64,000 nucleotides of DNA. Origin: Phyllobates terribilis (lineage: Eukaryota). Location: positions 421,166,001 through 421,230,000 of the forward strand of contig NW_027362767.1 of NCBI RefSeq assembly GCF_046119375.1, written 5' to 3'. Of this stretch, positions 86-56,069 are shown piece after piece. The notes below the pieces were generated by a model, which saw only the letters and a program-made list of their open reading frames with translations, made no database searches and was not told the DNA's origin. How positions within the stretch are numbered: the stretch's first letter is position 1; each line of letters opens with the position of its first letter. Both the position numbers and the translations under genes were made by a program.

Positions 86-3000
86 CTCTTCCATAGGCAG
101 AGGGGTAAACCCTTCCCCCAGTGCGGCCAGTGTGAATCTCACCCCGTTCCACACTTTGTTGCAGAAATGTCGCACAGCGAGAACCGAAGCGACGTCCAAA
201 TTAATGTCGTCACCTGGAAGCATAAAGGAGTATACGGCGTCTCATCTCAGGAAAATGGCAGAGACATAGACCGAAGCGTTGTTATATAATGGCAAAAAAG
301 TGTATGACAAAGCCACATGATCAAACCAAGCTGCAGTACCAGACACAGCCACATGATCAAACCAAGCTGCAGTACCAGACACAGCCACATGATCAAACCA
401 AGCTGCAGTACCAGACACAGCCACGTGATCAAACCAAGCTGCAGTACCAGACACAGCCACGTGATCAAACCAAGCTGCAATACCAGACACAGCCACGTGT
501 TCAAACCAAGCTGCAGTACCAGACACAGCCACGTGATCAAACCAAGCTGCAGTACCAGACACAGCCACATGATCAAACCAAGCTGCAGTACCAGACACAG
601 CCACATGATCAGGCCAAGCTCCAGTACCAGACACAGTCACATGATCAAACCAAGCTGCAATACCAGACACAGCCACATGATCAAACCAAGCTGCAGTACC
701 AGACACAGCCACATGATCAAACCAAGCTGCAGTATCAGACACAGCCACATGATCAAACCAAGCTGCAGTACCAGACACAGCCACATGATCAAACCAAGCT
801 GCAGTACCAGACACAGCCACATGATCAAACCAAGCTGCAGTACCAGACACAGCCACATTATCAAACCAAGTTGCAGTACCAGACACAACCACATGATCAA
901 ACCAAGCTGCAGTACCAGACACAGCCATGTGATCAAACCAAGCTGCAGTACCAGACACAGCCACATGATCAAACCAAGCTGCAGTACCAGACACAGCCAC
1001 ATGATCAAACCAAGCTGTAGTACCAGACACAGCCATATGATCAGGCCAAGCTTCAGTACCAGACACAGTCACATGATCAGGCCAAGCTGCAGTACCATAC
1101 ACAGCCACGGGAAAAAGGGGGGCGCTGTTTCAAGAAAAAAAAAAAAAGCGCCATCTCTAGCCCCATAGCTCTCCTTTCGGGATCATCAAGGCAGGTGAAA
1201 GGAGATTGAGCCTCACCTTGTACTCGATGAGAGCAGAGGGCAAATCTCAGGGCATCGGTGCCGCACTCCGGGATCCCATGGGGGTAATCCTTTACCTGGG
1301 AAAGGAATCAGACAAGAAATGATGAGGATGGTTAATGGGTCTTATAAACAGAAGGCGTATCATCTCAGTCCTGCCATCTGGCATCAGGGTTACAGGGACG
1401 GCAAAAGGGGCAAATGTCCAATAGGCCTCCACCACAGTGGGCCTCCACCGCAGGGATCTCCACAGCTAGGGCCTCCACCGCAGGGAGTCTCCACGGCAGG
1501 GGGGCCTCCACCGCAGGGGGCTTCGGCCCTAGAAGTCAATGATGTTTTACTTGAACCTGAGCAATGTTATCGTCAAACTTTACTGTGGCGTTTTTTTTTT
1601 TCCTGCAGTGTACGGCAGCATTTTAGGCACAATATAGCAGTATCATTTGAGCACTGTATGGTGGTATTATTTGTACATTTCTTAGCACTTTTTTTTAGGG
1701 GGGGGGGGAGGGGAGGTGGGGGTTGCAGAGTATAGAAGTGTGTTGTAATACCATAAAGCTTTTTTGTTTTTGGGCACTGCATGGCGGTATTATTTGTATT
1801 TGTGCCATACACTGCAAAAGCACCAGGAGTGTAATGTTTTTAGGCATCATATAGCTCTATTATTTTAGCGCTGCATAACAGTATCGTTTCACATTTCTGC
1901 AGTGAATGGCAGTATTTTCAGATACACAATGGCTCTATTATTACAGTATGGTATCGCGGTATGGTTTGTAAAATGTATAATAATGTTTTTTGCAGTATTA
2001 TTAGATACAGAATACCTCTATTAATTAGGCACTGAATGGCAGGAATTATTTGCGCCGTTATGGCAGCATTTGTTTCTAATTGGGCACTGTACGGAGGCCG
2101 TACAACACTTTTTTTTGCAACCTATGACACTAGGTACGATATAGCTCTATTATATCTGCACACTGTGTGGCGGTATTATTGGCATTTGTTATTTGTAGCG
2201 TATGGCAGTGTTTTCAGATACAATATAGTTTTATTATTTGGGCACTATATGGCGATATTATTTGTACATTGCATAGCACTGTGGTTTTTTTTTTGGTGAT
2301 ATTATTTGCGCATTTGATATCATTATTATTTCTAGGTTTTAGTCTTTGTTCCCCATTCACAAATGCATTTACCAAGTCTAAATAAACCCGTCCCATCTTA
2401 CCAGTCCGGACTCTGCTACTTTTAACTCTCGTGAGTCCAAATTTCCCTCCTTCAACTTTTCCTGCAGGTTCTGTGAAGATAAAATGAAGAACAATAATGA
2501 AGAGGTCTAGAAGTCCGATACAATTTGTGCACGCTGGAGCAGAAGTGTTTCAGGACAGAAACAAATGCAAAAGTCCGAGAGGTCCACACTTTGCTCTGCA
2601 CTGACGTTCTAAAATGTCACTGCAGAGTACAGCAGCTACACTGAATAGTGCAGCAGCGTGAGCGGGGAGACAACTGTCAGACACAGCCGAGCTTCCCAAA
2701 GAGAGGACAGAGATGGATTATAACCATCTCTGCCTTCCTCATCACTCTATACACAGTACAGAACAAGTGCCATGTATGCAGTATAAGAGGTGCTGTCTGC
2801 ATTTCCTCCTCCAAACTCAGCTGTCAAGGTAATCACAGGAGAGAGCAGGACCTGCTTGGTCCTTATAGACCCAGTCAGCTCCGCTGTGCAGCTAGGAAGC
2901 TACATTTCCCCTGTAACTAGGGCTAATGTACCAGCCCCAGTCACAGGGGAAAATGAAAAATAAATAATGTATTGATTATTTTAAAATGCCATAGTCAGTG

Positions 3001-6000: not shown

Positions 6001-9000
6001 GTAGGTCTCATAGTGTCTCCCCACTCAGAAAGTTTGTAAAGTTTGCTGTAATCTGCTGATGTGCCACCAGATGGCGCTGGTTGTAGTCAGTCATCGCCAC
6101 CTGGTGGCTGCACGGAGAACTACATCTGGATTGCGGATGTTCTTACCTACAGACGGGCAGCAGCATCGAATGCTCACGGTCTCCTCTATAAAGTCCTTTC
6201 TCCTTCAGTGCGGCCACAACCTGCTCCCGGGCGTCAAATCTTTTCACGCCCTGTAAGAATCCACTGACACACTGTAACGCTGACCGATACGAGAGAAGGG
6301 GAGGATAGATAGATGATCAGACCTGTATCCAATCCCCGCAGGCTTCCGTCATGGATCCGTCTTCCCCGATCACAGAAATCGATGGGAGCGCCAGGTCTTG
6401 TGCCATCTCGAAGTCCACCGGGCTGTGAGCGGGGGTCACCTTCACGGCTCCTACAAGAAAACATTGGCAGCGAGGATCACACTGCCACCTAGTGAGTCAT
6501 AGCTGTAACCACAGTGTGGAGCTGTACTGACCGGTGCCAAACTCCGGGTTCACCAGCCGATGGGCGACAACTGGAAGCAGACGGCCGGAGAAAGGGTGAC
6601 GGAGGCTTTTGCCGTGGAGGCTCTAAGAAAGAACGAGTCCAAGGTCAGTCACCTCCACGACATGCGGAGTGTCACCCAATCCCCCTCTGCCATGTACCAA
6701 TGTGTCCAGCAGCCACCACTAGGGGGAGCTCACTGCTGTCAGAGGCGGGCGCTGGATGTATCACACAGTCGGCACCGGCCCCATTACAGGACAGCAGGGA
6801 GTCCCGAGTCTGATACTCTGTGCGATTCCTCCTCACACTCACCAGGTACCGGGGGTCGTCCGGATGGACCGCCACGGCTGTGTCCCCCAGCAAGGTCTCC
6901 GGACGTGTGGTGGCCACAAGGATTTCACCATCTGCAAAGCAAGGAAGGCAGCTGAGTGATGGGGAGGCCGTTCTGAAGGGGGCGCCATCGGCTAAAGGAT
7001 CTACCTTCTTCTTCTGTGGGGTAAGCGAAGCTGAACAGGAGGCCGAAGGCGACTTTCTTCTCGTAGCCGGGAACAGTCAGGAAGGTTTTACCATCCAGCT
7101 GCCGACTCTCCACCTGTGGAAAGAGAACACTATGTGCGGTGTATGGTGAGAGCAGAGACGGACAATGAAGTCCACATCGAGAGGCGGCGGACAGGACGGT
7201 CTACGTCTCCTCTACATATCAAGAGGCGGTGGACGGGACGGTCCACGTCTCCTCTACACATCTAGAGGCGGCGGACAGGACGGTCTACGTCTCCTCTACA
7301 TATCAAGAGGCGGTGGACGGGACGGTCCACGTCTCCTCTACACATCTAGAGGCGGCGGACAGGACGGTCCACGTCTCCTCTACATATCGAGAGGCGGCGG
7401 ACAGGACGGTCCTCGTCTCCTCTACATATCGAGAGGCGGCGGACAGGACGGTCCACGTCTCCTCTACATATCAAGAGGCGGTGGACGGGACGGTCCACGT
7501 CTCCTCTACACATCTAGAGGCGGCGGACAGGACGGTCCACGTCTCCTCTACATATCGAGAGGCGGCGGACAGGACGGTCCTCGTCTCCTCTACATATCGA
7601 GAGGCGGCGGACAGGACGGTCCACGTCTCCTCTACATATCGAGAGGCGGCGGACAGGACGGTCTACGTCTCCTCTACATATCAAGAGGCGGTGGACGGGA
7701 CGGTCCACGTCTCCTCTACACATCTAGAGGCGGCGGACAGGACGGTCCACGTCTCCTCTACATATCGAGAGGCGGCAGACAGAACGGTCCTCGTCTCCTC
7801 TACATATCGAGAGGCGGCGGACAGGACGGTCCACGTCTCCTCTACATATCGAGAGGCGGCGGACAGGACGGTCCTCGTCTCCTCTACATATCGAGAGGCG
7901 GCGGACGGGACGGTCCACGTCTCCTCTACATATCGAGAGGCGGCGGACAGGACGGTCCACGTCTCCTCTACAGATCGAGAGGCGGCGGACGGGACGGTCC
8001 ACGTCTCCTCTACCTACCGAGAGGCGGCGGACAGGACGGTCCTCGTCTCCTCTACATATCGAGAGGCGGCGGACGGGACGGTCCACGTCTCCTCTACGTA
8101 TCGAGAGGCGGCGGACGGGACGGTCCACGACTCCTCTACATATCGAGAGGCGGCGGACGGGACGGTCCACAACTCCTCTACATATCGTGAGGCGGCGGAC
8201 GGGACGTTCCACAACTCCTCTACATATCGAGAGGCGGCGGACAGGACGGTCCACGTCTCCTCTACCTATCGAGAGGCGGCGGACGGGACGGTCCACGTCT
8301 CCTCTACCTACCGAGAGGCGGCGGACGGGACGGTCCACGTCTCCTCTACCTACCAAGAGGGGGCGGACGGGACGGTCCACATCTCCTCTACATATCGAGA
8401 GGCGGCGGACAGGACGGTCCACGTCTCCTCTACATATCAAGAGGTGGCGGACAGGACGGTCCACGTCTCCTCTACATATCAAGAGGTGGCGGACAGGACG
8501 GTCCACGTCTCCTCTACATATCGAGAGGCGGCGGACGGGACGGTCCACGTCTCTCCTCCATGACAAGGGGTGGTGGATGATAAATGCCTCCCCTCTATAT
8601 CAGAGGCGGCGGACGATCCACCACTTACCTCCCTATCAGAGGTGGTGGTCGGACGGCCATGTCTTACCTCAATATCAGAGGTGGAGGTCGGACGGCCATG
8701 TCTTATCTCCCTTTCAGAGGCGACGGTCAGACGGCCATGTCTTACCTCAATATCAGAGGTGGTGGTCGGACGGCCATGTCTTACCTCCCTTTCAGAGGTG
8801 GCGGTCGGACGGCCATGTCTTACCTCAATATCAGAGATGGCGGATCGGAGGGCACAGGACCAGTTCACAAGACGATGGCGGCGACGAACCAAACCGCTCT
8901 CATAGAGGTGGATGAAGGCTTCAGACACGGCACAAGAGAAACGCTGGAGAAGAAAGGAAGAGAATCAGGACTAGGAGAGGCGGCAATGATTACGGGGGAG

Positions 9001-12000
9001 GATGAGACTGTACTGCACCACGGAATAGGAAGGCTCTATAGAAATCAGTGCAATTCTATAGAAAGGCCCCTGGCGATCGGGACGTTCCAAGAATCTGTCC
9101 GGTGCCACAATAGTCCCACGTGCCGGATCTTGTCACCTAAGTGATGTTCTGAGAGATTCACAGCGACATTTCAATAGTTACACAGCAGCGATCAGAGCTC
9201 AGGTGCCGGCTGTATGACGCGGCCGGCCGGTACGGGGAGGGATCAGCGATGTCGCCATATAACGGGGTCTCACCTCGTCCATAGTGAAGCAGGAGCGGTC
9301 CCAGTCCAGAGACGCCCCCAGGGACCGCAGCTGGTGATAGATCCTGTCCCCTTTACTGCAGGAAGGAAGAAGGTCACAAAGTCAGAGACCCCGAGGCTCT
9401 GGCCGCGACCAGGACTGATTGCATCTCTTACCTCTCCGTCCATTGCCACACGGCCCTGAGAAACTCCTCCCGACCCAAATCGTGGCGAGAGACGCCGCCT
9501 TCTTTATACAGGTTCTTCTCCACCACGGTCTATGACGGGGAAACAGCAGCGAGTCAGCACAGACCCTGCGGTGGGACTACACCGCCCAGCATGTGGTCTC
9601 CTGCATTACTGCACTGTATACCTGTGCAGGATGGCAAAAACCCATCGCCAGCAGCCTGGTAACGGCGGCACAAGCCCCAGTCACATTCATGGGATGCGGA
9701 TTTTACAAGGATTTAGCCTTGGCATCAGTGATAAAATCCGCCTGAAATCTGATCATTTCCTTTAGATCCAGTGCCGTACCTGAGTGGCGATCCCCGCGTG
9801 ATCGGATCCAGGCACCCACAGCACCTTCTCCCCTAGCATCCTCCTCCTGACCAAGAAGAAAGCAGAGACACACAGGACCGTGATGCCACTTCATTCTGCT
9901 CTGATCGCTGCTGAATTAAAGAGGTTGTGCGGGATTCGAAAAAAAAAAAAAAGGGGTCTGCAATTTGTTTTCCTCCCAGAAACAGCTCCACACCAGCATA
10001 CAGGCCGGGTCTGGTATTACACAAAGGTATCACTTGAATGGGGATGAGCTGCAATACCGGTGTGAGGAAAGAATCCGCTGTGGCTCGACTTCTGCTTGTG
10101 ACAGGGCAGCTTTTCCACTGTCAGTTCATGACCACTGCTGTGTAGAGGGGACTGGCTGGCTGCTCTTTTCAATAGCTAAGCCAACCTCCTCCTAGGTCTA
10201 TATGTTGGCTGTGACAGTGCTGGCTGTGCTATGGAAATAAGCAGCCGGACGCCTTCACACAGGAAGACACAGGAAACGTTGCCTTTATCTCAAGCAGAAG
10301 CCGGAAGTTCGATAACGGAAATACATTAGAAAGTTGTATCATTTGCTCGTTGAGGCAAATAAGTATAATTGTTTTTTTCTAACTGGAAAATCCCTTTAAC
10401 TCATTGGACGGGGGGGAATTTTCATTTTTGTGGTGTAATTTTTTTTTTTTTTTTTATTTCAGTGGCGAAGGCTTTTTAATTTTTCTTTTTTTTAATGTGC
10501 CGAGCTGCAGCTTTTATTGGAACCATTTTGGGCTACATTTGTTTGGATCCATTAATCCATTTTTTGGGGTGGGTGGGGGGGGGGTATTTACAAGACAACA
10601 ATAGCACCAAGTCTGGCGTTTCCATTTTTAATTTCCCTCTCTTTTCGGTATTTATATCACCATAGGTTAGATTTTTACAAAAGGTGGCGAGACCAAATAT
10701 GGTTATTTCTTTATTTTTGGGGGGGGGGGAATAAACTTTTCAAACTTCCATTTACTTTTTCGCCCCTTCCCAAGAAGTTTGATCCTGTGATTGGTTGATC
10801 ATTTGTTCAATATAGTAAATATAGGCAGCGATGGGGAAAGGGGGGTCTTCATGGCAACCCACTGGCACCCTGAGGTCACATCATGGGGGGCTGATGGGCA
10901 GCGAGGGATAAAAACCCTTTAAATGTTGCAGTCAGAAGTTGACAGTGGCATCTAAGCGGTTACACAGCAGTGATCAGACCTTAGGTCTGTGCAGCTTTTC
11001 AGACGTGACGCTCCTACTCACCAGCGCACCAGACAGTCCTCTATGGCGACGGTGAGAGCGTGGCCCAGGTGGAGGGAGCCGGTGACGTTGGGCGGAGGGA
11101 TGCAGATTGAGAAGGTTTGAGGCCGGGCGTGGGGGAGACGATTCTGTGATGGGAGAAAGGAAAAATAAAATGCATATTTATCACGTTACATCCACATATC
11201 TGTACGTGCTGCGGATTTGGGGTCTTTTTCCCCCCTCTGCAGTTTTCGGTAATTCCCCGTACAGCGATGACGATGGAAAAAGGAGGAGGCAAAAACAAAA
11301 TACAAAGACAGAAAATGGCCGGATCCTGAACGGGTTAATTAGAAAGTGAGAATCTGCAGCTGCGTCTTCCTCTTCTCCCCTTGTTTTCTATTTAGCGCAA
11401 TGCATGGTCTGACAGTAGGGGGCGCTCCTCACTGTAATGGCGGTGCCGCCTCTCACACTTCCTCCTCACCTGGTGCTCCGGCTTGAAGAATCCTTGCTTC
11501 ACCCACCAGGAATACCAGGCGGCCTCCACGTATCGGGGACTGTACGCCACCGGCAGCGGCACACGGGTGTCTAGGCATGAAATATAAGGCATCAACAGAT
11601 AAGACGGCGAGGGCAGCAAGAGCAGGTGGCATATGGTCTACGTACTGCCATACTGTGCCCACACGGTGCCAGACAGGCCACAGATCATCATACACAGCCA
11701 ACATACTGCCATACAGTGCCCACATAGAGCCGCATGGTACCAGATATACCACGTATCATATAGAACCAACATACTGCCATACTGCGCCCACACGGTGCCA
11801 GACAGACCACAGGTCATCATACACAGCCAACATACTGCTATACTGTGCCCACCTAAAGCCAGACAGACCACAGTCATCATACACAGCCAACACACTGCCA
11901 TACAGTGCCCACGCGGTGCCAGACAGACCACAGTCATCATACACAGCCAACATACTGCCATACAGTGCCCACGCGGTGCCAGACAGACCACAGTCATCAT

Positions 12001-14490
12001 ACACAGCCAACATACTGCCATATAGTGCCCACATAGAGCCAGACAGACCACAGTCATCATACACAGCCAACATACTGCCATACTGTGCCAACATAAAGCC
12101 AGACAGACCACAGATCATCTTACACAGCCAACATACTGCCATACTGTTCCCACACGGTGCCAGACAGACCACAGATCATCATACACAGCCAACAGACTGC
12201 CATACTGTGCCCACGCGGTGCCAGACAGACCACAGTCATCATACACAGCCAACATACTGCCATACTGTGCCCACATAAAGCCAGACAGACCACAGATCAT
12301 CATACACAGCCAACATATTGCCATACAGTGCCCACACGGTGCCAGACAGACCACAGATTATCATACACAGCCAACATACTGCCATACTGTGCCCACGCGG
12401 TGCCAGACAGACCACAGTCATCATACACAGCCAACATACTGCCATACTGTGCCCACATAAAGCCAGACAGACCACAGTCATCATACACAGCCAACATACT
12501 GCCATACTGTGCCCACGTAAAGCCAGACAGACCACAGATCATCATACACAGCCAACATACTGCCATACAGTGCCCACACGGTGCCAGACAGACCACAGTC
12601 ATCATACACAGCCAACATACTGCCATACAGTGCCCACACGGTGCCAGACAGACCACAGTCATCATACCCAGCCAACATACTGCCATACTGTGCCCACATA
12701 AAGCCAGACAGACCACAGTCATCATACACAGCCAACATACTGCCATACTGTGCCCACATAAAGCCAGACAGACCACAGATCATCATACACAACCAACATA
12801 CTGCCATACTGTGCCCACATAAAGCCAGACAGACCACAGTCATCATACACAGCCAACACACTGCCATACAGTGCCCACACGGTGCCAGACAGACCACAGA
12901 TCATCATACACAGCCAACATACTGCCATACTGTGCCAACACGGTGCCAGACAGACCACAGATCATCATACACAGCCAACATACTGCCATACTGTGCCAAC
13001 ACGGTGCCAGACAGACCACAGATCATCATACACAGCCAACATACTGCCATACCGTGCCCACACGGTGCCAGACAGGCCACAGATCATCATACACAGCCAA
13101 CATACTGCCATACTGTGCCCACATAAAGCCAGACAGACCACAGTCATCATACACAGCCAACACACTGCCATACAGTGCCCACACAGCGCCAGACAGACCA
13201 CAGATCATCATACACAGCCAACATACTGCCATACAGTGCCCACATAGAGCCACATGGTACCAGACAGACCACATATCATATAGAACCAACATACTGCCAT
13301 ACTGTGCCCACACAGTGCCAGACAGACGATATAATGATCACAAACAGCTGACATACTGCCATACTGCGCCCACCCAGTGCCACAAAGTGCTAGATCATAC
13401 AAAGCTGTCAAAAAGCCATACCGTGCCCACAGAGCGGTGCAGTATCTGGCGGCATTATTTTGTCACGGAATGGCGCTGTATAGTAAGTATATAGGTGTTG
13501 CACAATGGCATCATTTAGACGCCGTCTATTATTTCGGTGTGATATTATACCGCCGCAGTCTGGGAGCGGACTATTTGGCGGCACTATGTATATACGGCTA
13601 GGGAGTATTATTTAGGAACGCTTGGGTACTTTCTGCGTTCATTACACGGGCGCATTCAGGATGTGTTTATTAGCAAATGAACGGTGGTATTGTTCAGCAC
13701 TATGTGGCGTTATGATAGGAGTTTACTATTTAGAAACAGTATGGTGGGATTATTTGTATCGCGTGGATACTATAGAGACATACAGGCACAATTTGTGAGT
13801 AAATAACTGTATGGCGCCATTATACGGGCACAGATAGGGCCGTGTATCGTCACATTAAGGTGCCATTACCTGTGCAATATATCTTAAACCCCCAAAAAAT
13901 GAACTGGAGTATAAATTGGTCTGAAGGCAGAAAAGGAGCGTGTTCACACTGGTCATCAGACAAAACCCAAGACAGGAACAAAATACACAAATACCCTGCT
14001 GCCTGAGATTCCCGCTTTACTCCCTCCCCGCTGATGTAGTAAGAATCACTGCCCCCTCAGGCACCGCCGCCATCTCTCATCATCCACTTTCCCATGGAGC
14101 TGTGACGCTGCCCTCTTGTGGCAGCAGCAGTATCACTGGTAATGCCTCGCTGATATCACTAGTCCTCCAGACTGATGGCGCCCGTTCTGCCGTCATACCT
14201 TTCTTTTCTCCTGGCGCCGTGCGACCTTCGTACTCGACGGTCTCCTTGTCTCGCCAGCGCCGGCCTTTCCCTGGAGCCTGTGGACACATAGCGCCTATTA
14301 GTGAGTATACGCTGTATACACTCGTACAGTATAATAAGGCGTCACTCACTGTCTCCAGCGCGGCATCCTCCTCCCGCTGACACTGCTGACGCCGCCGACG
14401 CTCGTCCCTCCTAGTCCGCTCTGTGACGTTAGCGGCGCTCCTGCAGGGCGCTCCCCCAATAACACCGTGGCCGCGTAAGAGGCGGAGCAT
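86..14490 (-). CDS. VARS2: Mitochondrial valyl-tRNA synthetase (class Ia aaRS); 5' 750 codons in 23 coding exons, 3' end outside the window
   Basis: Hand-spliced GT-AG exons, phases consistent, sum 2250 nt: 14490-14350, 14277-14199, 11570-11470, 11143-11022, 9846-9780, 9529-9432, 9355-9274, 8943-8824, 7113-7005, 6931-6843, 6622-6532, 6450-6323, 6250-6147, 5468-5387, 5303-5227, 4895-4829, 4748-4634, 4511-4441, 4022-3897, 3165-3061, 2470-2402, 1295-1217, 213-86. Motifs: [102 protein letters not shown]. The Arg-rich N-terminus (MLRLLRGH) without a GST-like domain and [11 protein letters not shown] indicate VARS2 rather than VARS1. Confidence 0.97.
312..1107. repeat. 36-bp minisatellite (~22 copies) in a VARS2 intron
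   Basis: Unit CCACATGATCAAACCAAGCTGCAGTACCAGACACAG; gives 12-aa periodic ORFs ([12 protein letters not shown]). Confidence 0.97.
1560..2330. repeat. Degenerate AT-rich low-complexity repeat (GGCACT..TATGGCGGTATTATT-like)
   Basis: Recurrent motifs ggcact/atggcggtattattt; related sequence at 13420-13900 and 14620-15300. Confidence 0.6.
4250..4345. mobile_element. ~95-bp hairpin mini-element with CTCF-like arms (second copy 5523-5614)
   Basis: Inverted arms GCAGCTGCCACTAGAGGGAGCTCA ... TGAGCTCCCCCTGGTGGCGACTGC; same layout at 5523-5614; solo arms at 6716-6730 and 57716-57731. Confidence 0.65.
7165..8850. repeat. CpG-rich minisatellite: ~33 x 42 bp (7165-8560) grading into ~6 x 39 bp (8620-8850) that overlaps a VARS2 exon end
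   Basis: 42-mer GAGAGGCGGCGGACAGGACGGTCCACGTCTCCTCTACATATC; 39-mer GTCTTACCTCAATATCAGAGGTGGAGGTCGGACGGCCAT. Confidence 0.96.
11630..13420. repeat. 60/61-bp minisatellite (~29 copies) in a VARS2 intron
   Basis: Unit CACAG(A)TCATCATACACAGCCAACATACTGCCATAC(T/A)GTGCCCAC(ACGGT/ATAAA)GCCAGACAGAC. Confidence 0.96.
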
Positions 14491-16165: not shown

Positions 16166-16497
16166 TTCTCTTTTTCAGGAAAACAGTTGAACAAGACTAT
16201 ATAACATGTTTTTGTTTTCTAAAATGTCTCCACCTCTGTCTGGCATTACAGCACAGCCTCATTCACTTCAGTGGCGCTGAGCTGCAGTACCAGACACAAC
16301 CCATGGACTGGTGTGGCGCTGTATCTGGAAGCAGACATGTTTATCTAGTCATGGAGAACTTTAAGAATTGATTTTTCTCTTGATTATAGGCGTGAAACCC
16401 AACATGTAAGTGACTCCACTGGGCAGCAGGGGGCACTGCTGGTAACCTCCTGCCGCAATGTGACAGCAGGTCTAACCTCCTTCCTCCAGCCTTGGAC

Positions 16498-17361
16498 ATG
16501 AAAACGTCTTTTGGTCATGATGGACGACATGCACTAGATTTGAAAAGACAGGAAGAACTTCAACCATCCAAGAAGCCAGAGCCAGAGATGATCTCCAAAC
16601 TGTCTTGTGTAGCACCAGAAAATATGATGGAGGATTTAATCATGGATGACCATATCCTGACCGAGGACAGTAAGGAGGATGAGACCCGTGAACCACAGAT
16701 GGACGTCACGTACTACGCTGATGCTGGGGACAATGGCAGTGAAGAGTCCTTGGGTAACGTAGAAGACCCTTCTGAGATTGTGGAGGACGACAATGGAGAG
16801 GTCCGTTATGTCTGCTCCATCTGTGGGAAGATGTTCAAGCACATCGGTCACCTGAACCGACATAAGAAGAACCACTCTGGCCAGACTGCTTACAAATGTG
16901 AGGAGTGTGCTAAAAGCTTCTGCGATCAGCAAACGCTGGTGGTCCACCAGCGAGCCCACACCAGGGAGAAGCCATACAAGTGCTCCGAATGCGAGAAGAC
17001 CTTCGTCAACCAGTCCCACCTTACCGCCCACATGAGGATCCACACGGGGGTGAAGCCATTCATGTGCCCCATATGTAATCGCACTTTCACCAACTCATCC
17101 AGCCTAAAGAGGCATCAACAGACTCACACGGGGGATCGGCCGCACAAGTGCATGGAGTGCTCCAAAGCGTTCGGCCGGAGGGCCCACCTGGTGCGACACC
17201 TGAGGATACACACGGGCGAGAAACCCTATAAATGTTACAAGTGCGACAAGACGTTCAATAGGAAATTCTCTCTGGAAATGCACTACAGAGTTCATACGAA
17301 AGTAAGACCCCAGGCGGACCCCGAATCTTCTGGGAGCACAGACGATTCCGATGATTGGTGA
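16498..17361 (+). CDS. ZNF-A: C2H2 zinc-finger protein, 287 aa, acidic N-terminus plus 6 tandem fingers, single coding exon
   Basis: Acceptor ttcctccag|C at 16489/16490, ATG 16498; six C-x2-C-x12-H-x3-H fingers with TGEKP-type linkers; TGA at 17359-17361; no KRAB or FAX box. Confidence 0.93.
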   Translation: MKTSFGHDGRHALDLKRQEELQPSKKPEPEMISKLSCVAPENMMEDLIMDDHILTEDSKEDETREPQMDVTYYADAGDNGSEESLGNVEDPSEIVEDDNGEVRYVCSICGKMFKHIGHLNRHKKNHSGQTAYKCEECAKSFCDQQTLVVHQRAHTREKPYKCSECEKTFVNQSHLTAHMRIHTGVKPFMCPICNRTFTNSSSLKRHQQTHTGDRPHKCMECSKAFGRRAHLVRHLRIHTGEKPYKCYKCDKTFNRKFSLEMHYRVHTKVRPQADPESSGSTDDSDDW

Positions 17362-18253: not shown

Positions 18254-19877
18254 CAGTACAGACCAAAAGTTTGGACACACCTCATTTAAAGATTTTTCTG
18301 TATTTTCATGACTATGAAAATTGTACATTCACACTGAAGGCATCAAAACTATGAATTAACACATGTGGAATTATATACTTAACAAAAAAGTGTGAAACAA
18401 CTGAAAATATGTCTTATATTCTAGATTCTTCAAAGTAGCCACCTTTTGCTTTGATGACTGCTTTGCACACTCTTGGCATTCTCTTGATGAGCTTCAAGAG
18501 GTAGTCACCGGAAATGGTTTTCACTTCACAGGTGTGCCCTGTCAGGTTTAATAAGTGGGATTTCTTGCCTTATAAATGGGGTTGGGACCATCAGTTGTGT
18601 TGTGCAGAAGTCAGGTGGATACACAGCTGATAGTCCTACTGAATAGACTGTTAGAATTTGTATTATGGCAAGAAAAAAGCAGCTAAGTAAAGAAAAACGA
18701 GTGGCCATAATTACTTTAAGAAATGAAGGTCAGTCAGTGCGAAAAATTGGGAAAACTTTGAAAGTGTCCCCAAGTGCAGTTGCAAAAACCATCAAGCGCT
18801 ACAAAGAAACTGGCTAACATGAGGACCGCCCAAGGAAACGACCAAGAGTCACCTCTGCTTCTGAGGATAAGTTTATCCGAGTCACCAGCCTCAGAAATCG
18901 CAGGTTAACAGCAGCTCAGATTAGAGACCAGGTCAATGCCACACAGAGTTCTAGCAGCAGACACATCTCTACAACAACTGTTAAGAGGAGACTTTGTGCA
19001 GCAGGCCTTCATGGTAAAATAGCTGCTAGGAAACCTCTGCTAAGGACAGGCAACAAGCAGAAGAGACAAGTTTGGGCTAAAGAACACAATGAATGGACAT
19101 TAGACCACTGGAAATCTGTGCTTTGGTCTGATGAGTCCAAATTTGAGATCTTTGGTTCCAACCACCGTGTCTTTGTGCGACACAGAAAAGGTGAACGGAT
19201 GGACTCGACTTGCCTGGTTCCCACCGTGAAGCATGGAGGAGGAGGTGTGATGGTGTGGGGGTGCTTCGCTGGTGACACTGTTGGGGATTTATTCAAAATT
19301 GAAGGCATACTGAACCAGCATGGCTACCACAGCATCTTGCAGCGGCATGCTATTCCATCCGGTTTGCGTTTAGTTGGACCATCATTTATTTTTCAACAGG
19401 ACAATGACCCCAAACACATCTCCAGGCTGTGTAAGGGCTATTTGACCAAGAGGGAGAGTGATGGGGTGCTACGCAGGATGACCTGGCCTCCACAGTCACC
19501 AGACCTGAACCCAATCGAGATGGTTTGGGGTGAGCTGGACTGCAGAGTGAAGGCGAAAGGGCCAACAAGTGCTAAGCATCTCTGGGAACTCCTTCAAGAT
19601 TGTTGGAAGACCATTTCTGGTGACTACCTCTTGAAGCTCATCAAGAGAATGCCAAGAGTGTGCAAAGCAGTCATCAAAGCAAAAGGTGGCTACTTTGAAG
19701 AACCTAGAATATAAGACATATTTTCAGTTGTTTCACACTTTTTTGTTAAGTATATAATTCCACATGTGTTAATTCATAGTTTTGATGCCTTCAGTGTGAA
19801 TGTACAATTTTCATAGTCATGAAAATGCAGAAAAATCTTTAAATGAGAAGGTGTGTCCAAACTTTTGGTCTGTACTT
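18254..19877 (+). mobile_element. Tc1-like DNA transposon with DD38E transposase (Intruder-type spacing); full length, one nonsense codon
   Basis: TA at 18252-53 and 19878-79; ~265-bp TIRs starting CAGTACAGACCAAAAGTTTGGACACACC; transposase frame ATG 18665 to TAA 19714 with one in-frame TAA at 18815; [24 protein letters not shown]; 38 residues between the second D and E. Confidence 0.95.
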
Positions 19878-20146: not shown

Positions 20147-23100
20147 CCGGTTCCCGACCGCCCACTGTAGATAAACGTCGGCGCTTGCCGGGCTCTGTGC
20201 AGCGCCGACGTTTAAAACCGGTGGGTGGTCTCGCAGTGCTCAGGACCCCCAGGGTCCTGCAAGCACTGCGATTCCGGTGCAGAGCGTTAGCTCTGACAGG
20301 GTACATCATCGGGACCTGATTAGATCAGGTCCCAGTGATGTTAACCCTTTGCTGTCTTCTATATGCTGCGATCTATAGTGATTGCGGCATATAGGAGACA
20401 GCAAGAGGAGAGGGGGTCGTCTTACTTACCTCCGAAGACCTCCGTTTCGTTTGAGGACCTGGGGTTGCTATGGCAGCTGGAGGTCACATGACCGCCTCCA
20501 GCTCTGCCATATATGGTGTCCTTCCTGTCTGGCTTCAGCCTGTATGTAGCTGATTCCAGACAGGAGACTGAAACAGTCAGTGAAGATCTCATGTAATGTA
20601 ATATATGTCTATTACATTACATGAGATCAGTGATCAGAAAAATAAAAATTAATGTCCCATACAGGGACTAAGTAAAAATGTAAAAAAAAGTAAAAAAAAA
20701 GTTTTTAAACTATTAAAAAAAAAAATCACAAAATAAATAAAAATAAATAAATAAAATAATAAACCAATAAATCCGCATATTATTACAAAACCAAAAAAAG
20801 TACACATATTTGGTATCGCCGCGTCCGAAACAACCCGAGCTATAAAACTGTCACACTAATTAACTCCTTCTGTGCACACCGTAATAAAAATAAATAAAAA
20901 ACGGAGCAAAAAAATATGCTTTTTCATCATATCGCCAAACAAAAAGTGGAAAAAAATGCGATCAAAAAGCAGAATAGAAATAAAAATGGTACCACTGAAA
21001 ACTTCATCTTGTTCCGCAAAAAAAAGCCGCCATACAGCTCCATTAGCCGAAAAATAAAAAAGTTATAGCGCTCAGAATAAAGCAATGCAAAAAAAATATT
21101 TTTTTTTCTATAAAATTGTTTTATTGTGTAAAAGCACCAAAACATGAAAAAAATACAGTAAGTGTAGTATCGCTGTAAACGTACTGACCCCAAGAATAAC
21201 GCTGCCTGATCACTTTTACCACACGCAGAACGGCATAAAAAAAAACTCAAAAAACAATTCCTGAAGTGTTTGTTTTTGTTAACTTTACCTCCCAAAAAAC
21301 GGAATAGAAAGCGATCAAAAAATGTCACGTACCCAAAAATGGTTCCAATAAAAATGTCAACTCGTCCCGCAAAAAAAAAGCCGTCACATGACTCTATCGG
21401 CCGAAATATGGAAAAATTATAGCTCTCAAAATATGGTGATGCAAAAACTAGATTTTGCAAAAAAAGCGTATTTTAGTGTGTGACAGCTGCCAAACATAAA
21501 AACCCGATATAAATCTGGTATCTCTGTAATCGCACCGACCCGAAGAATAAAGTAATCTAATCAGTTATATCACACTAGGAACGGCGTAAAAAATAAATAA
21601 AACAAATATTATTCACCTGCTACTGATTTGTTTATTATGTCTCCCAAAGATCCCAGTAAGGCTCTGCCCACATTTATCCTGCGCTCTGCGCTGAGCACTT
21701 ACACCAGAGTTTCCGTGTAAATCTCTGAAATACGTGATTCAGCCAGAACCCATGATGGAAGATTTCCTGTAATGAGGCAGATATAGGCCACTGTGGACGC
21801 CGTCTAGCCTGGGATCCCACGGTGTCATTTGTTTTAGGCGTGCATAAAAGTGCGGTTGGCCACAGTTTTGTGCACTTCTGAAAAAAAGGACACCACTAAA
21901 CAGAGGCCAGACGGAGTCCAGAGTAACTCAGCTGCCTAATTATAGTGAATGGATCCCGCAGGGGTTTCATCTGAATTACATCACTTGGAAATTTAGATGG
22001 AAACCCCGATGTAAGTGCTCAGCCTAGAGCGCCGGATAAATGTTACGTAAAATGTTCCCAATAAACGCTTCAACTCAGTCCTCAAAAAAAGCTAGTCCCC
22101 ACTCAGGTCCATCATCTGTTAAAAATATAAGGGACTTCCAAGTTACTGGTAGCAGAAAGGCTCTGGAAAAGCAAAATGGTCCTTGCCCCCCAAAAGAAAT
22201 TCAGAAAATTTTGTGCTCCCAAATCCAAATGCCTATTCTACAATAATTTGTTCTCCAATTGTGAAATACCACTCCGTCCCCCCCAGATCTCGCCATATGG
22301 CTGAGCGGTACGATGCAGCCACATATGGGGTATTGACACTTTTAGAAGAAATTGTGTGACACATTTCGGCACCATTTTTACCCATTGCCCTGTGTGAAAA
22401 TGTAAAATCTGAGGGTAAAACATTTTTTTGTGGTAAAAATATAATTATGCTTTTTTCACTGCCCAATGGTATAAATTTAAAAATTAAAAAATGCTCACTA
22501 CTTCCCTAGATGAATTCCTTGAGAGGTGTAGTTTACAAAATGGGGTCACTTGTGGGGGTTTCTGCTGTTTCGGCATGTCAGCAACTCTTCAAATGTGACA
22601 TGGTGTCTGCTGCCTTTCCCAGCCAACATAGCGCTTCTTTCTCTTCCGAACCCTGCCGTACACCAAAGCAGTGGTTTTCCCCCACATATGGGGTATCGGC
22701 GTACTCAGGAGAAATTGTACAACAAATTTCATGGTGCAATTTATCCTGTTACCCTTATGATAATGCAAAATTAGGGAATGAAAAACATTTTTTATGGGAA
22801 AAATGTGAAAATTTTATTTTTACGGCTCAATATTATAAACTTCTGTGAAGCAGCTGGGGGTGCAAGGTGCTCACCACACATCTAGATAAGTTCCCTAAGG
22901 GGTATAGTTTCCAAAATGGTGGCACTTGTGGGGGGTTTCCACTGTTTAGTCACATTAGGGGCTCCCCAAATGCGACATGGCGTCTGCTAATTATTCAAAC
23001 AAATTTTACATTCAAAAAGTCAAATGGCGCTCCTTCCCTTTCAAACCCTGCCATGCGCCCAAACAGTAATTTGCCTCCACATATGGGGTATCGGCGTGTT

Positions 23101-24588
23101 CAGGAGAAATTGCAGAACAAATTTCATGGTGCAATTTATCCTGTTACCCTTATGATAATACAAAATTAGGGAATGAAAAACATTTTTTGAGGGAAAAATG
23201 TGAAAATTTTATTTTTACGGCTCAATATTATAAACTTCTGTGAAGCAGCTGGGGGTGCAAGGTGCTCACCACACATCTAGATAAGTTCCCTAAGGGGTCT
23301 AGTTTCCAAAATGGTGGCACTTGTGGGGGGTTTCCACTGTTTAGTCACATTAGGGGCTCCCCAAATGCGACATGGCGTCTGCTAATTATTCAAACAAATT
23401 TTACATTCAAAAAGTCAAATGGCCCTCCTTCCCTTTCAAACCCTGCCATGTGCCCAAACAGTAATTTGCCTCCACATATGGGGTATCAGCGTGTTCAGGA
23501 GAAATTGCATGACAAATTTCATGGTGCAATTTATCCTATTACCCTTATGATAATGCAAAATTAAGGGATGAAAAACGGTTTTGTGGGAAAAATGTGAAAA
23601 TTTTATTTTTACAGCTCAATATTATAAACTTCTGTGAAGCACCTTGGGGTTCAAGGTGCTCACCACACATCTAGATAAGTTCCCTAAGGGGTCTAGTTTC
23701 CAAAATGGTGTCACTTGTGGGGGGTTTCCACTGTTTAGGCACATCAGGAGCTCTCCAAACGCAACATAGCGTCTGCTAATTATTCAGACAAATTTTACAT
23801 TCAAAAAGTCTAATGGCGCTCCTTCCCTTCCGAACCCTGCCGTGCGCCCAAACAGTGGTTTTCCCTCACATATGGGGTATCAGCACACTCAAGAGAAATT
23901 GCACAAAAAATTTGGGGTCCATTTTTTCATGTTACCCCTGTAAAAATAAAAAAAATTGGGTCTAAAGTAACATTTTTGTGAAAAAAGTTAAATGTTAATT
24001 TTTTTCTTCCACATTCCAAAAATTCCTGTGAAGCACCTGAAGGGTTAATAAAGTTCTTGAATGTGGTTTTGAGCACCTTGGGGGGTGCAGTTTTTAGAAT
24101 GGTGTCACTTTTGGGTATTTTCTGTCATAAAGACCCCTCAAAGTGACTTCAAATATGATGTGGTCCCTAAAAAAATGTTTTTTGTAAATTTTGTTGGAAA
24201 AATGAGAAATCGCTGGTCAACTTTTAACCCTTATAGCTCCCTAACAAAAATTGTGCTGATGTAAAGTAGACATGTGGGAAATGTTATTTATTAACTATTT
24301 TGTGTGACATATCTCTCTGATTTAAGGGCATGAAAATTCAAAGTTTGAAAATTGCAAAATTTTCAAAATTTTCGCCAAATTTCCGATTTTTTTTTACAAA
24401 TAAACACAAGTTATATCGAAGAAATTTTACCACTATCATGAAGTACAATATGTCACGAAAAAACAACTACAGAATCAGGGGAATACGTTGAAGCGTTCCA
24501 GAGTAATTACTTCATAAACTGGCAGTGGTCAGAATTGAAAAAATTGGCCCGGTCACGAAGGCAAAAACAGGCTCTGGCGCCGAATTGG
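20147..24588. mobile_element. ~4.4-kb non-autonomous TTAA-target DNA element with an internal 395-bp tandem array, nested in a shorter TTAA-family element (~20050-24700)
   Basis: TTAA at 20143-46 and 24589-92; termini CCGGTTCCCGACC / GGCGCCGAATTGG match only weakly; 395-bp period (ORF copies at 22867 and 23262; units at ~22781, 23176, 23571); the two flanks join into one sequence resembling the 36203 element. The superfamily (piggyBac or Kolobok) cannot be fixed. Confidence 0.75.
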
Positions 24589-26970: not shown

Positions 26971-27811
26971 CTCCGCTTGCAGTGCATTCTTGCAGATCTC
27001 CGCTTGCAGTGCATTCTTTCAGATCTCCGCTTGCAGTGCATTCTTACAGATCTCCGCTTGCAGTGCATTCTTTCAGATCTCCGCTTGCAGTGCATTCTTG
27101 CAGATCTCCGCATGCAGTGCATTCTTACAGATCTCCGCTTGCAGTGCATTCTGACAGATCTCCGCTTGCAGTGCATTCTGACAGATCTCCGCTTGCAGTG
27201 CATTCTTACAGATCTCCGCTTGCAGTGCTTTCTTACAGATCTCCGCTTGCTGTGCATTCTTGCAGATCTCCGCTTGCAGTGCATTCTGCCATCTCTGCTT
27301 GCAATGCATTCTGACAGATCTCCGCTTGCAGTGCATTCTTGCAGATCTCCGCTTGCAGTGCATTCTTGCAGATCTCCGCTTGCAGTGCATTCTTGCAGAT
27401 CTCCGCTTGCAGTGCATTCTGACAGATCTCCGCTTGCAGTGCATTCTGACAGATCTCCGCTTGCAGTGCATTCTTGCAGATCTCCGCTTGCAGTGCATTC
27501 TTGCAGATCTCCGCTTGCTGTGCATTCTTGCAGATCTCCGCTTGCAGTGCATTCTGCCATCTCCGCTTGCAGTGCATTCTTGCAGATCTCCGCTTGCAGT
27601 GCATTCTTGCAGATCTCCGCTTGCAGTGCATTCTGACAGATCTCCGCTTGCAGTGCATTCTTGCAGATCTCCGCTTGCAGTGCATTCTTGCAGATCTCCG
27701 CTTGCAGTGCATTCTTTCAGATCTCCGCTTGCAGTGCATTCTTTCAGATCTCCGCATGCAGTGCATTCTTGCAGATCTCCGCTTGCATTGCATTCTGGGA
27801 GATCTCCACTT
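26971..27811. repeat. 27-bp minisatellite (~31 copies)
   Basis: Unit CTCCGCTTGCAGTGCATTCTTGCAGAT with 26-bp variants. Confidence 0.96.
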
Positions 27812-27931
27812 GCTTTCAGTGAGTTTTAATTAACATCCATAACCAAGAATCAGATCCATCGAACCGATACTTTGTAGTGAACTGTCTGGCCGATCAGGAC
27901 AAGTCATTGTCTTGTTGCCATACACTGACAG

Positions 27932-30709: not shown

Positions 30710-31810
30710 GGCAGGGGCTCGGTGATGCCTACAGTAAATGATGGTGGAGCTCGATGCCTACAGTGAACGATGATGGGGGCTCAGCGATACCTACAGTGAA
30801 GCATGGTGGGGTGCTTGGTGACGCCTACAGTGAAAGATGGCAGGAGCTTAGTGATGCTTGCAGTGAACTGTGGCAGGGGCTCGGTGACTCTTACATTGAA
30901 ATGTGGCAGGGGCTCGGTGACTCTTACATTGAAATGTGGCAGGGGCTCGGTGATGCCTACGGTGAAAGATGGCGGGGGATCGGTGACGCCTACAGTGAAA
31001 GATGGCGGAGCTCGGTGACGCCTAAAGTGAAAGATGGCAGAGCTCGGTGATGCCTAAAGTGAAAGATGGCGGGGCTCAATGATACCTACAGTGAAAGATG
31101 GCGGGGTCTCGGTCATGCCTACAGTGAAAGATGGTGGGGCTCGGTGACACCTACAGTGAAAGATGGCAGGGGCTCGGTGACTCCTACAGTGAAAGATGGC
31201 AGGGGCTCGGTGACTCCTACAGTGAAAGATGGCAGGGGCTCGGTGACTCCTACAGTGAAAGATGGTGGAGGCTCTGTGACGCCTACAGTGAAAGATGGCA
31301 GGGACTCAGTGACGCCTACAGTGAAAGATGGCGGAGGCTCTGTGACGCCTACAGTGAAAGATGGCAGGGGCTCGGTGACGCCTACAGTGAAAGATGGCAG
31401 GGGCTCGGTGACGCCTACAGTGAAAGATGGCAGGGTCTCGGTGACTCCTACAGTGAAAGATGGCAGGGTCTCGGTGACTCCTACAGTGAAAGATGGCGGA
31501 AGCTCTGTGATGCCTACAGTGAAAGATGGCAGGGGCTCGGTGACGCCTACAGTGAAAGATGGCGGCGGCTCGGTGATGCCCACAGTGAAAGATGGCGGAG
31601 GCTCGGTGACTCCTACAGTGAAAGATGGCGGGGCTCGGTGACGCCTACAGTGAAAGATGGCGGGGCTCGGTGACACCTACAGTGAAAGATGGCGGAGGCT
31701 CGGTGACTCCTACAGTGAAAGATGGCGGAGGCTCGGTGACGCCTACAGTGAAAGATGGCAGCGGCTCGGTGACGCCTACAGTGAAAGATGGTGGAGGCTC
31801 TGTGACGCCT
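30710..31810. repeat. 33-bp minisatellite (~33 copies)
   Basis: Unit GGCTCGGTGACGCCTACAGTGAAAGATGGCAGG; 11-aa periodic ORFs. Confidence 0.96.
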
Positions 31811-35700: not shown

Positions 35701-35870
35701 TTCCAGGAACGACACTAAGGAGATGTTCCAGGAACGACACCAAGGAGATGCTCCAGGAACGACACTAAGGAGATGCTCCAGGAACGACACTAAGGAGATG
35801 CTCCAGGAACGACACTAAGGAGATGCTCCCGGAACGACACTAAGAAGATGCTCCAGGAACGACACTAAGA
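32780..35870. repeat. 25/27-bp minisatellite (~90 copies) split by a MITE
   Basis: Left units CTAAGAAGATGCCCC(AT)AGGAAC(G/T)AC(A/C); right units GACACTAAGGAGATGCTCCAGGAAC. Confidence 0.96.
33303..34089. mobile_element. Harbinger-like MITE (family of 28124-28968) inside the 25-bp array; right TIR clipped
   Basis: Starts GGCTGCGTGCACACAATGCG and ends GCATCGTGGGCACAG; shares CACTATATAAAT..GCATGGATTTATATAGTGTGACC..GTTGTCAAGCACTTTCCAAGTGATGCTA with the first copy. Confidence 0.88.
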
Positions 35871-55740: not shown

Positions 55741-56069
55741 AAGGCTGGAAGTGCCGGGATTTCTGCACGAGGCTCAGACCCCAGACCGAAGAAATCCAAA
55801 GGTTTTGAATGTTGTTTAATTTTTTTCCTCATTTGCAGGTCAGTGAGTGATCGCCAGAATTCTACGACTTTTCCTTCTTCATGTTGCAATTTCCATGACA
55901 AGAAGTGTACAAGATACATAATGTGCAAATCACTGTTTAAAATTGTCATATTACATCAGAAAATCCCTCCAAGGCCCCAGCCACTAAGTGTCTCTGCTTA
56001 GTCTTCTTGATCACTGCCTGTTGTCAAGTGTAATCCATCTCTAGCTGCGGAGACACAGAGATGGAGTAC

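What the first reader, a model, noticed from the sequence alone, without database searches (positions are those of the whole stretch)
8627..8830. In-frame ladder of duplicated 5' splice sites on a VARS2 exon
Seen: the donor ending exon 8943-8824 (GAG|GTAAGA) repeats every 39 nt. Intact copies give exon ends at 8785, 8746, 8668 (GAG|GTAAGA) and 8629 (GAG|GTAAGT, full consensus); the copy at 8707 is mutated to AT. The extension is stop-free and in frame ([30 protein letters not shown]...), so each alternative donor would add 13, 26, 52 or 65 aa just before the CP1 editing region. The most distal donor is closest to consensus. Inference: this allows length-tunable, possibly VNTR-genotype-dependent isoforms of an essential mitochondrial synthetase, or it needs active suppression of the extra donors.
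Basis: partly seen in the sequence, partly recalled or inferred. Interest (0 to 1): 0.72.

Follow-up and report, generated by a model that had tools for sequence, protein, structure and literature searches.

The report
Silent splice-donor repeats in frog VARS2
A 39-base repeat copied from the end of a frog valyl-tRNA synthetase exon plus its splice signal puts four extra intact splice donors in the next intron, but the assembled RNA from four runs splices only at the first one, as in known human cases such as the F7 gene.

Summary
On the minus strand, ValRS exon 8943-8824 ends GAG|GTAAGA. That junction is the first unit of a 39-nt tandem array (8853-8624, 5.9 copies). It gives in-frame donor copies at 8785, 8746 and 8668 (19 nt identical to the authentic site), a stronger one at 8629 (GTAAGT) and a dead one at 8707 (AT). 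The array continues as 33 copies of a homologous 42-nt unit whose donor is GA in every copy, so about 94% of the 1710-nt intron descends from the junction.

The isoform-ladder reading is not borne out. In four transcriptome assemblies from two studies, the only mRNA contig joins 8824 to the acceptor at 7113. No contig uses another donor. The extension shows no coding constraint (0 synonymous against 11 nonsynonymous codon differences).

This is a known kind of structure: a minisatellite whose first monomer spans an exon-intron boundary (human F7 IVS7, IFI6, CBS, LMNB2; PMC1557585). In F7, only the most upstream donor is used. The scan found the same thing twice before elsewhere in this genome (BSPRY, EMC1).

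Rare use of the extra donors cannot be excluded, because only contigs were available, not raw reads. Array length polymorphism could not be tested.

The parts
8824..8943 (-). ValRS (VARS2-like) exon, 120 nt, ending ...AISDIE
   Evidence: Pfam tRNA-synt_1 E=4e-8. Aligns to 1GAX ValRS residues 150-187. Both ends are supported by spliced RNA contigs in 4 runs.
8818..8826 (-). Authentic 5' splice site GAG|GTAAGA, the only one seen in use
   Evidence: The mRNA contigs end their match at 8822, and their overhang maps exactly to 7082-7111. The 2 shared bases (GT) place the junction at 8824|7113.
8624..8853 (-). 39-nt minisatellite, 5.9 copies (78-nt two-unit period). Its first unit is the last 29 nt of the exon plus the first 10 nt of the intron.
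   Evidence: TRF. The founder copy aligns to the next copy with 29/39 ungapped identity, more with one indel.
8779..8787 (-). Pseudo-donor 1, GAG|GTAAGA (+13 aa if used)
   Evidence: U1 duplex -9.6 kcal/mol, equal to the authentic site. No RNA contig uses it.
8740..8748 (-). Pseudo-donor 2, GAG|GTAAGA (+26 aa if used)
   Evidence: Not used in the RNA contigs.
8701..8709 (-). Dead copy, GAG|ATAAGA
   Evidence: U1 duplex -3.2 kcal/mol.
8662..8670 (-). Pseudo-donor 3, GAG|GTAAGA (+52 aa if used)
   Evidence: Not used in the RNA contigs.
8623..8631 (-). Pseudo-donor 4, GAG|GTAAGT, the strongest (+65 aa if used)
   Evidence: 8 of 9 matches to the consensus. U1 duplex -11.8 kcal/mol. A depth-4 contig in run X6 reads straight through it unspliced.
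8554..8622 (-). Transition stretch with one more degenerate unit (GAG|GGGAGG at 8593) and a short non-repeat stretch
7176..8553 (-). 42-nt minisatellite, 32.8 copies, homologous to the 39-nt unit. The donor position reads GA in all 32 units counted.
   Evidence: TRF. Consensus alignment scores 22 against -19 +/- 6 for shuffles. Donor-position census.
7114..8823 (-). The intron, 1710 nt, of which about 94% is junction-derived repeat
7005..7113 (-). Next exon ([36 protein letters not shown]). The acceptor at 7113 is RNA-supported; the 3' end at 7005 is read from the sequence only.

Best explanation
This is a junction-derived intronic minisatellite. A tandem duplication of about 39 nt, covering the last 29 nt of the ValRS exon and the first 10 nt of the intron, seeded an array. 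The array then grew by replication slippage or unequal exchange. It first became a two-variant 78-nt unit. Later a 42-nt derivative that had lost the GT expanded to about 33 copies. Together these now make up nearly the whole intron. The four intact donor copies are pseudo-sites. The spliceosome uses the most upstream donor, the one that closes the 120-nt exon, and the rest are removed with the intron. The most likely reason is positional preference (5'-to-3' selection of the first competent donor, or exon definition), as shown experimentally for the human F7 IVS7 minisatellite. Dedicated repression is less likely. The in-frame, stop-free extension is inherited from the coding origin of the unit and is not maintained by selection. 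Shown here: the anatomy, the homology of the two arrays, and exclusive contig-level use of the first donor. Inferred: the mode of origin and the positional-selection mechanism.
For: The 39-nt and 42-nt consensus units align far better than shuffles, 22 against -19 +/- 6 with a shuffle maximum of 5. In RNA from four runs of two studies, one spliced mRNA contig per run (depth 53-92) shows five upstream canonical junctions and ends at 8822, with an overhang that maps exactly to 7082-7111. The bin depths for 8768-8871 equal main-contig depth x 50/104 in every run, so nothing else covers the first extension. The only contig inside the array (X6, 8608-8750, depth 4) runs unspliced across donors 8746 to 8629. 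It resembles the low-depth contigs in the neighbouring intron at 8976-9258, so it is most likely pre-mRNA. The extra donors are as strong as donors the gene does use: U1 duplex -9.6 and -11.8 kcal/mol against -7.3 to -11.6. Weakness therefore does not explain their silence. The extension shows no coding constraint: 0 synonymous against 11 nonsynonymous codon differences, and variable columns fall 3/3/2 by codon position. No protein of 85-270 aa in the 5.8-billion-protein collection carries the repeat peptide. Precedent and mechanism come from PMC1557585. The same architecture is noted twice more in this genome. About 19% of this window is minisatellite, so a seed landing on a donor by chance is not surprising.
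Against: Only assembled contigs were available, not raw reads. Contigs drop rare variants, so use of the extra donors below roughly 5-10% would go unseen. Tissue and condition of the runs are unknown. In two of the human precedents (IFI6, CBS) the first two pseudo-sites are used constitutively, so silence is not universal for this architecture. In F7 minigenes, pseudo-sites with a perfect consensus did compete, and the 8629 copy is close to consensus. The positional mechanism was shown in mammalian cells and is carried over to frog by inference.
Confidence: 0.8

Rival explanations
1. The ladder is used at a low level or in some conditions. A minority of transcripts would splice from 8785 (and perhaps 8746 and beyond), giving ValRS isoforms with +13, +26 and larger insertions, as happens at the IFI6 and CBS junction minisatellites.
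For: The donors are identical to the authentic one over 19 nt and equal or better in U1 pairing. The products are in frame and so would escape nonsense-mediated decay. [quoted passage not shown] Contigs cannot show absence.
Against: No contig in four runs from two studies covers the first extension or carries an alternative junction. The inserted peptide shows no coding constraint. The insertion would fall right after the SDIE residues that align to 1GAX 184-187, at the entry to the editing domain. By established knowledge of class Ia synthetases this is a conserved connecting strand, so it is likely harmful (plus inference).
Confidence: 0.13
2. The reiterated donors have a function as U1 snRNP binding sites inside the intron. 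They would reinforce definition of the upstream exon or protect the nascent transcript, and are kept for that reason.
For: Four of five extra copies in the 39-nt array keep an intact GT, and the 21 nt following the cut are the least variable part of the unit. Downstream U1 sites are known to influence splicing of upstream sites (general knowledge).
Against: The great majority of the array, 32 of 32 counted 42-nt units, has lost the GT. The part that expanded is therefore the donor-dead one. With only five copies in a two-unit higher-order repeat, conservation is explained by recent common descent. The exon already has a strong donor.
Confidence: 0.05
3. The array is an assembly artefact, with copy number or order not real.
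For: Tandem arrays are prone to collapse or expansion in assemblies, and no DNA run was available for a check.
Against: An independent RNA-run contig (X6) matches 8608-8750 with 0 differences across more than three units. The exon-to-first-unit junction is matched without difference in all four runs.
Confidence: 0.02

Closest known systems
Human F7 intron 7 37-bp VNTR (Borensztajn et al. 2006, PMC1557585)
   Same: It is a minisatellite whose first monomer spans the exon-intron boundary. The authentic donor is followed by several pseudo-sites of identical sequence, and only the most upstream donor is used.
   Different: The F7 unit is 37 bp with only 4 exonic bp, so most pseudo-sites shift the frame. 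Here the unit is 39 nt with 29 exonic nt and every step is in frame. The F7 donor is weak (consensus value 74) whereas this one is strong. Here the array continues as a donor-dead 42-nt derivative that fills the intron. Neither polymorphism nor activation of the pseudo-sites after mutation has been tested here.
Human IFI6 (6-16) intron 2 and CBS intron 13 junction minisatellites (as summarised in PMC1557585)
   Same: The donor is reiterated by a junction-spanning minisatellite.
   Different: [quoted passage not shown] In the frog ValRS gene no such transcripts appear in four RNA assemblies.
Human LMNB2 (100-bp unit) and PDGF intron 4 (81-bp unit) junction minisatellites (PMC1557585)
   Same: Only the authentic donor is used despite reiterated copies.
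   Different: The unit sizes and host genes differ. No mechanism was studied for them.
Junction minisatellites noted earlier in this same frog genome (BSPRY exon 5, EMC1 intron 20; scan notes s1-211421, s1-224835)
   Same: An exon end plus its donor is copied in tandem and fills most of the next intron. For BSPRY the assembled RNA used only the first copy.
   Different: The genes, unit lengths (60 nt for BSPRY; not given for EMC1) and copy numbers differ. I did not re-examine those loci.

Membership tests
Junction-spanning minisatellite with reiterated 5' pseudo-splice sites (F7 IVS7 type) | Tandem array whose first monomer spans an exon-intron boundary | tested here: met
   The TRF array 8624-8853 starts 30 nt inside the exon. 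The founder copy aligns to the next copy.
Junction-spanning minisatellite with reiterated 5' pseudo-splice sites (F7 IVS7 type) | The donor sequence is repeated identically in the following intron | tested here: met
   Three copies are identical over 19 nt, one has a better consensus and one is dead.
Junction-spanning minisatellite with reiterated 5' pseudo-splice sites (F7 IVS7 type) | Only the most upstream donor is used physiologically | tested here: met
   Met at the level of assembled contigs in four runs from two studies. Rare use is not excluded.
Junction-spanning minisatellite with reiterated 5' pseudo-splice sites (F7 IVS7 type) | Pseudo-sites are competent and take over when the upstream site is inactivated | not testable with these tools
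   This needs minigene mutagenesis. Only strength was computed.
Junction-spanning minisatellite with reiterated 5' pseudo-splice sites (F7 IVS7 type) | Copy-number polymorphism (VNTR) | not tested
Isoform-producing junction minisatellite (IFI6 / CBS type) | Transcripts spliced from the second or third donor copy alongside the first | tested here: not met
   No contig covers 8768-8821 beyond the main mRNA contig, and no alternative junction is seen. Contigs show presence rather than absence, so this holds only for abundant isoforms.
Valyl-tRNA synthetase, class Ia (host gene) | Class I synthetase catalytic core with a ValRS-like sequence at this exon | tested here: met
   Pfam PF00133. Alignment to 1GAX ValRS residues 150-187. 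Word-search hits are ValRS fragments sharing [17 protein letters not shown].
Mitochondrial paralogue (VARS2) as opposed to cytosolic VARS1 | Short N-terminus with a targeting sequence and no GST-like N-terminal domain | tested here: inconclusive
   The mRNA contigs extend only 291-334 nt 5' of exon 11470-11572 in all four runs. Exon 1 (14201-14490) opens MLRLLRGHG. No orthology search with a full-length model was done, because exons were not joined.

The most novel reading that the evidence does not exclude
The extra in-frame donors are used at a low level or in particular tissues, stages or genotypes. That would give a mitochondrial ValRS with 13-65 aa inserted at the entry to its editing domain, with isoform length depending on array copy number. 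This would be a frog counterpart of the IFI6 ladder in an essential housekeeping enzyme.
Probability: 0.08. Interest if true: 0.5.

Novelty: new member of a known kind. Interest (0 to 1): 0.25.

Why it matters
As it stands the finding is a tidy natural example and not a surprise. It shows once more that the spliceosome picks the first of several identical, strong donors and ignores a better one 195 nt downstream. It extends to an amphibian a rule worked out on the human F7 gene. This genome now has at least three such loci (VARS2, BSPRY, EMC1). That makes it a convenient natural panel for testing positional 5' splice-site choice with different unit lengths, donor strengths and reading frames. 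For annotation, the practical lesson is that gene predictors may extend this exon through the open frame or choose the consensus-like distal donor, and the RNA evidence says they should not.

Tried and rejected
1. RNA secondary structure as the reason for silence. Local accessibility of every donor 9-mer, the authentic one included, came out near zero (0.0006 against 0.0000-0.0001). This does not discriminate, so I dropped it.

2. Donor weakness as the reason. The copies equal or exceed used donors in U1 pairing, so this is rejected.

3. The open frame as a sign of coding. There are 0 synonymous against 11 nonsynonymous codon differences, and all three plus-strand frames are open as well, so this is rejected.

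4. Word search with the read-through ORF 8482-8943. It found only ValRS fragments matching the 40-aa exon part, and none carried the repeat peptide. Several of these fragments look mammalian, and I did not pursue them further.

5. The second exon alone against the PDB gave no hit.

6. Steps left out. I left the 42-nt array and the downstream exon out of the reads call to avoid the tool's bar on long repeats, so the acceptor was identified from the contig overhang instead. MaxEntScan models are not installed. I used consensus matches and U1 duplex energy instead.

Full report
**What is in the sequence**

Read on the minus strand, the stretch 8943-8824 is an exon encoding [40 protein letters not shown].
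- It matches Pfam tRNA-synt_1 at E=4e-8.
- It aligns to Thermus thermophilus ValRS (1GAX) residues 150-187, ending at SDLE.
- The exon ends GAG|GTAAGA.

Tandem Repeats Finder reports a 39-nt array at 8624-8853 with 5.9 copies, 84% matches and no indels. A 78-nt two-unit period fits better, at 90%.

The first unit consists of the last 29 nt of the exon plus the first 10 nt of the intron. It aligns to the next unit with 29/39 ungapped identity, and more with one indel.

| Last exonic base | Site | State |
|---|---|---|
| 8824 | GAG\|GTAAGA | authentic donor |
| 8785 | GAG\|GTAAGA | intact copy |
| 8746 | GAG\|GTAAGA | intact copy |
| 8707 | GAG\|ATAAGA | dead |
| 8668 | GAG\|GTAAGA | intact copy |
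| 8629 | GAG\|GTAAGT | intact copy, closer to consensus |
| 8593 | GAG\|GGGAGG | dead, degenerate unit |

A 19-nt pattern around the donor occurs five times in the window against none expected.

The exon frame stays open through the array to a stop at 8479-8481. Each step is 39 nt, which is 13 codons.

**The wider structure**

- From 8553 to 7176 the intron is 32.8 copies of a 42-nt unit.
- The consensus of that unit aligns to the 39-nt unit with score 22. Rotated shuffles gave -19 +/- 6, with a maximum of 5.
- At the position homologous to the donor, all 32 units counted read GA in place of GT.
- About 94% of the 1710-nt intron (7114-8823) therefore descends from the exon-intron junction.
- The donor-dead variant is the one that expanded. 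The donor-live variant stayed at five extra copies.

The next exon begins at 7113 behind a good acceptor (a pyrimidine tract followed by CAG). It reads [32 protein letters not shown], the expected continuation of a ValRS.

**The gene**

Spliced contigs define the upstream exons 9274-9355, 9432-9529, 9780-9845, 11021/2-11143 and 11470-11572. The contig overhang 5' of 11572 maps to 14201-14230. This lies in an open frame that starts at 14490 with MLRLLRGHG.

In all four runs the mRNA contig ends 291-334 nt upstream of exon 11470-11572. The protein therefore has only about 100 residues before the catalytic core. This fits the mitochondrial paralogue (VARS2) and not cytosolic VARS1 with its long N-terminal domain. 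That comparison rests on my knowledge of the human proteins.

No full-length orthology search was made, and each exon was searched singly by reference. An earlier scan note identifies the genome as a frog.

**RNA evidence**

The run search returned eight runs from two studies. Each holds about 0.22 of the sampled words, which is about the share I would expect exons to make up of the query. Their contigs are spliced, so they are RNA. I laid X1 and X2 (study P1) and X5 and X6 (study P2) on 8560-11650.

- **Main mRNA contig.** In every run one mRNA contig (depth 53-92) crosses five canonical introns. X5 carries it in two pieces that break inside the exon at 8906/8908.
- **The junction.** The contig stops matching at 8822 with a long overhang. 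The 30-nt overhang consensus maps exactly and uniquely to 7082-7111. The two bases GT are shared by the intron start and the next exon, so the junction is 8824|7113.
- **No room for other contigs.** The depth in bin 8768-8871 equals main-contig depth x 50/104 in each run (44.1, 36.8, 28.3, 25.7). No other contig touches the first extension.
- **No coverage deeper in the array.** Bins 8560-8767 are empty in three runs.
- **One intronic contig.** In X6 a 151-nt contig of depth 4 covers 8608-8750 without a difference. It runs unspliced across the donors at 8746, 8707, 8668 and 8629 and 21 nt beyond the last.
- **Background level.** Contigs of similar depth (2-4.4) lie in the neighbouring intron at 8976-9258. 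This is most simply pre-mRNA background.

Contigs drop rare variants, and the tissues are unknown to me. Use below roughly 5-10% stays open.

**Why the copies are silent**

Weakness is not the reason. The computed U1 5'-end duplex energies are:

| Site | U1 duplex energy (kcal/mol) |
|---|---|
| Authentic site and its three identical copies | -9.6 |
| Copy at 8629 | -11.8 |
| Other donors this gene uses | -7.3 to -11.6 |
| Dead copy at 8707 | -3.2 |
| 42-nt units | -3.1 |

Predicted local accessibility is near zero for all the donors, the authentic one included. It does not discriminate.

The best available explanation comes from the literature. Borensztajn et al. 2006 (PMC1557585) dissected the human F7 intron 7 37-bp VNTR, whose first monomer spans the exon 7 boundary.
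- All its pseudo-sites are functional.
- Only the most upstream competent site is used, in several cell types.
- Pseudo-sites raised to a consensus value of 91 still do not compete. Only perfect-consensus sites do.
- No autonomous intronic silencer was found.

The authors interpret this as 5'-to-3' oriented selection, partly overlapping with exon definition. I carry that mechanism over to the frog gene by inference.

**Is the open frame meaningful?**

No.
- The unit is 29 nt of in-frame coding sequence plus three new codons (GTA AGA CAT). Every copy is therefore open by descent.
- Among the five extension units there are 0 synonymous and 11 nonsynonymous codon differences from the consensus.
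- Variable columns fall 3/3/2 by codon position.
- All three plus-strand frames are also stop-free.
- A word search of 5.8 billion proteins with the read-through ORF found only ValRS fragments matching the exon part. None carried the VRHGRPT... repeat.
- Several of those fragments from other animals read through the same SDIE|V boundary. The intron position therefore appears to be old.

**Comparison with what is known**

The PMC1557585 introduction lists the class: minisatellites whose first monomer spans an exon-intron boundary, so that the donor is reiterated.
- IFI6 (6-16) has 25 pseudo-sites, and the two most proximal are used constitutively.
- CBS intron 13 also uses two pseudo-sites.
- In LMNB2, PDGF and F7 only the authentic site is used.

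The frog ValRS locus meets the structural criteria and behaves like the F7 group. The in-frame period is a small twist and nothing more.

The scan's own notes record two more loci of the same architecture in this genome, BSPRY and EMC1. I did not re-examine them.

About 19% of this window is minisatellite, by my sum of the arrays. Four arrays lie within the visible part of this gene alone. A rough estimate takes 17 donors x 39 nt over 14.5 kb, which is about 5% per array. On that estimate a seed landing on a donor is no great coincidence. This is inference.

**Verdict**

The isoform-ladder reading is not supported at contig level. The structure is a new member of a known kind and most likely a tolerated by-product of repeat-prone DNA. 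The open points are rare or conditional use of the extra donors and copy-number polymorphism. Both need raw reads or bench work.

Noticed in passing
window 8608-8750 (run X6, contig record 9): The low-depth intronic contig carries an 8-letter overhang at 8750 (plus strand ATCTCCTC) that does not match the assembly. It could be a contig-end artefact or an allele with a different unit order in the array.
   Followed up: no
window 306-1108, 11736-13382, 22649-23913, 26971-27813, 30756-31810, 32788-33303, 34101-35869, 56067-56920, 59857-60677: The window is unusually rich in long minisatellites with periods of 25-395 nt. By my sum of the TRF rows they cover about 19% of the window. Two more of them lie in introns of the same ValRS gene.
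   Followed up: partly
window 14201-14490 (-): This is the first coding exon of the ValRS gene. It opens MLRLLRGHG..., which is arginine-rich and looks like a mitochondrial presequence. The RNA contigs end about 45 nt upstream of the ATG.
   Followed up: partly
window 16492-17361 (+): A 289-aa ORF with six or so C2H2 zinc fingers (Pfam zf-C2H2, zf-H2C2_2) lies just upstream of the ValRS promoter on the opposite strand.
   Followed up: no
window 19118-19714 (+): A Tc1/mariner-type transposase fragment (Pfam DDE_3, just below the cut-off). The scan has already noted it (s1-209237).
   Followed up: no
window 8016-8352 (-): A few 42-nt units carry a variant ...TCGGTAGGTAGAGG. This creates moderate GT sites (for example TCG|GTAGGT) that are absent from the consensus unit. 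No RNA data were laid on this part.
   Followed up: no
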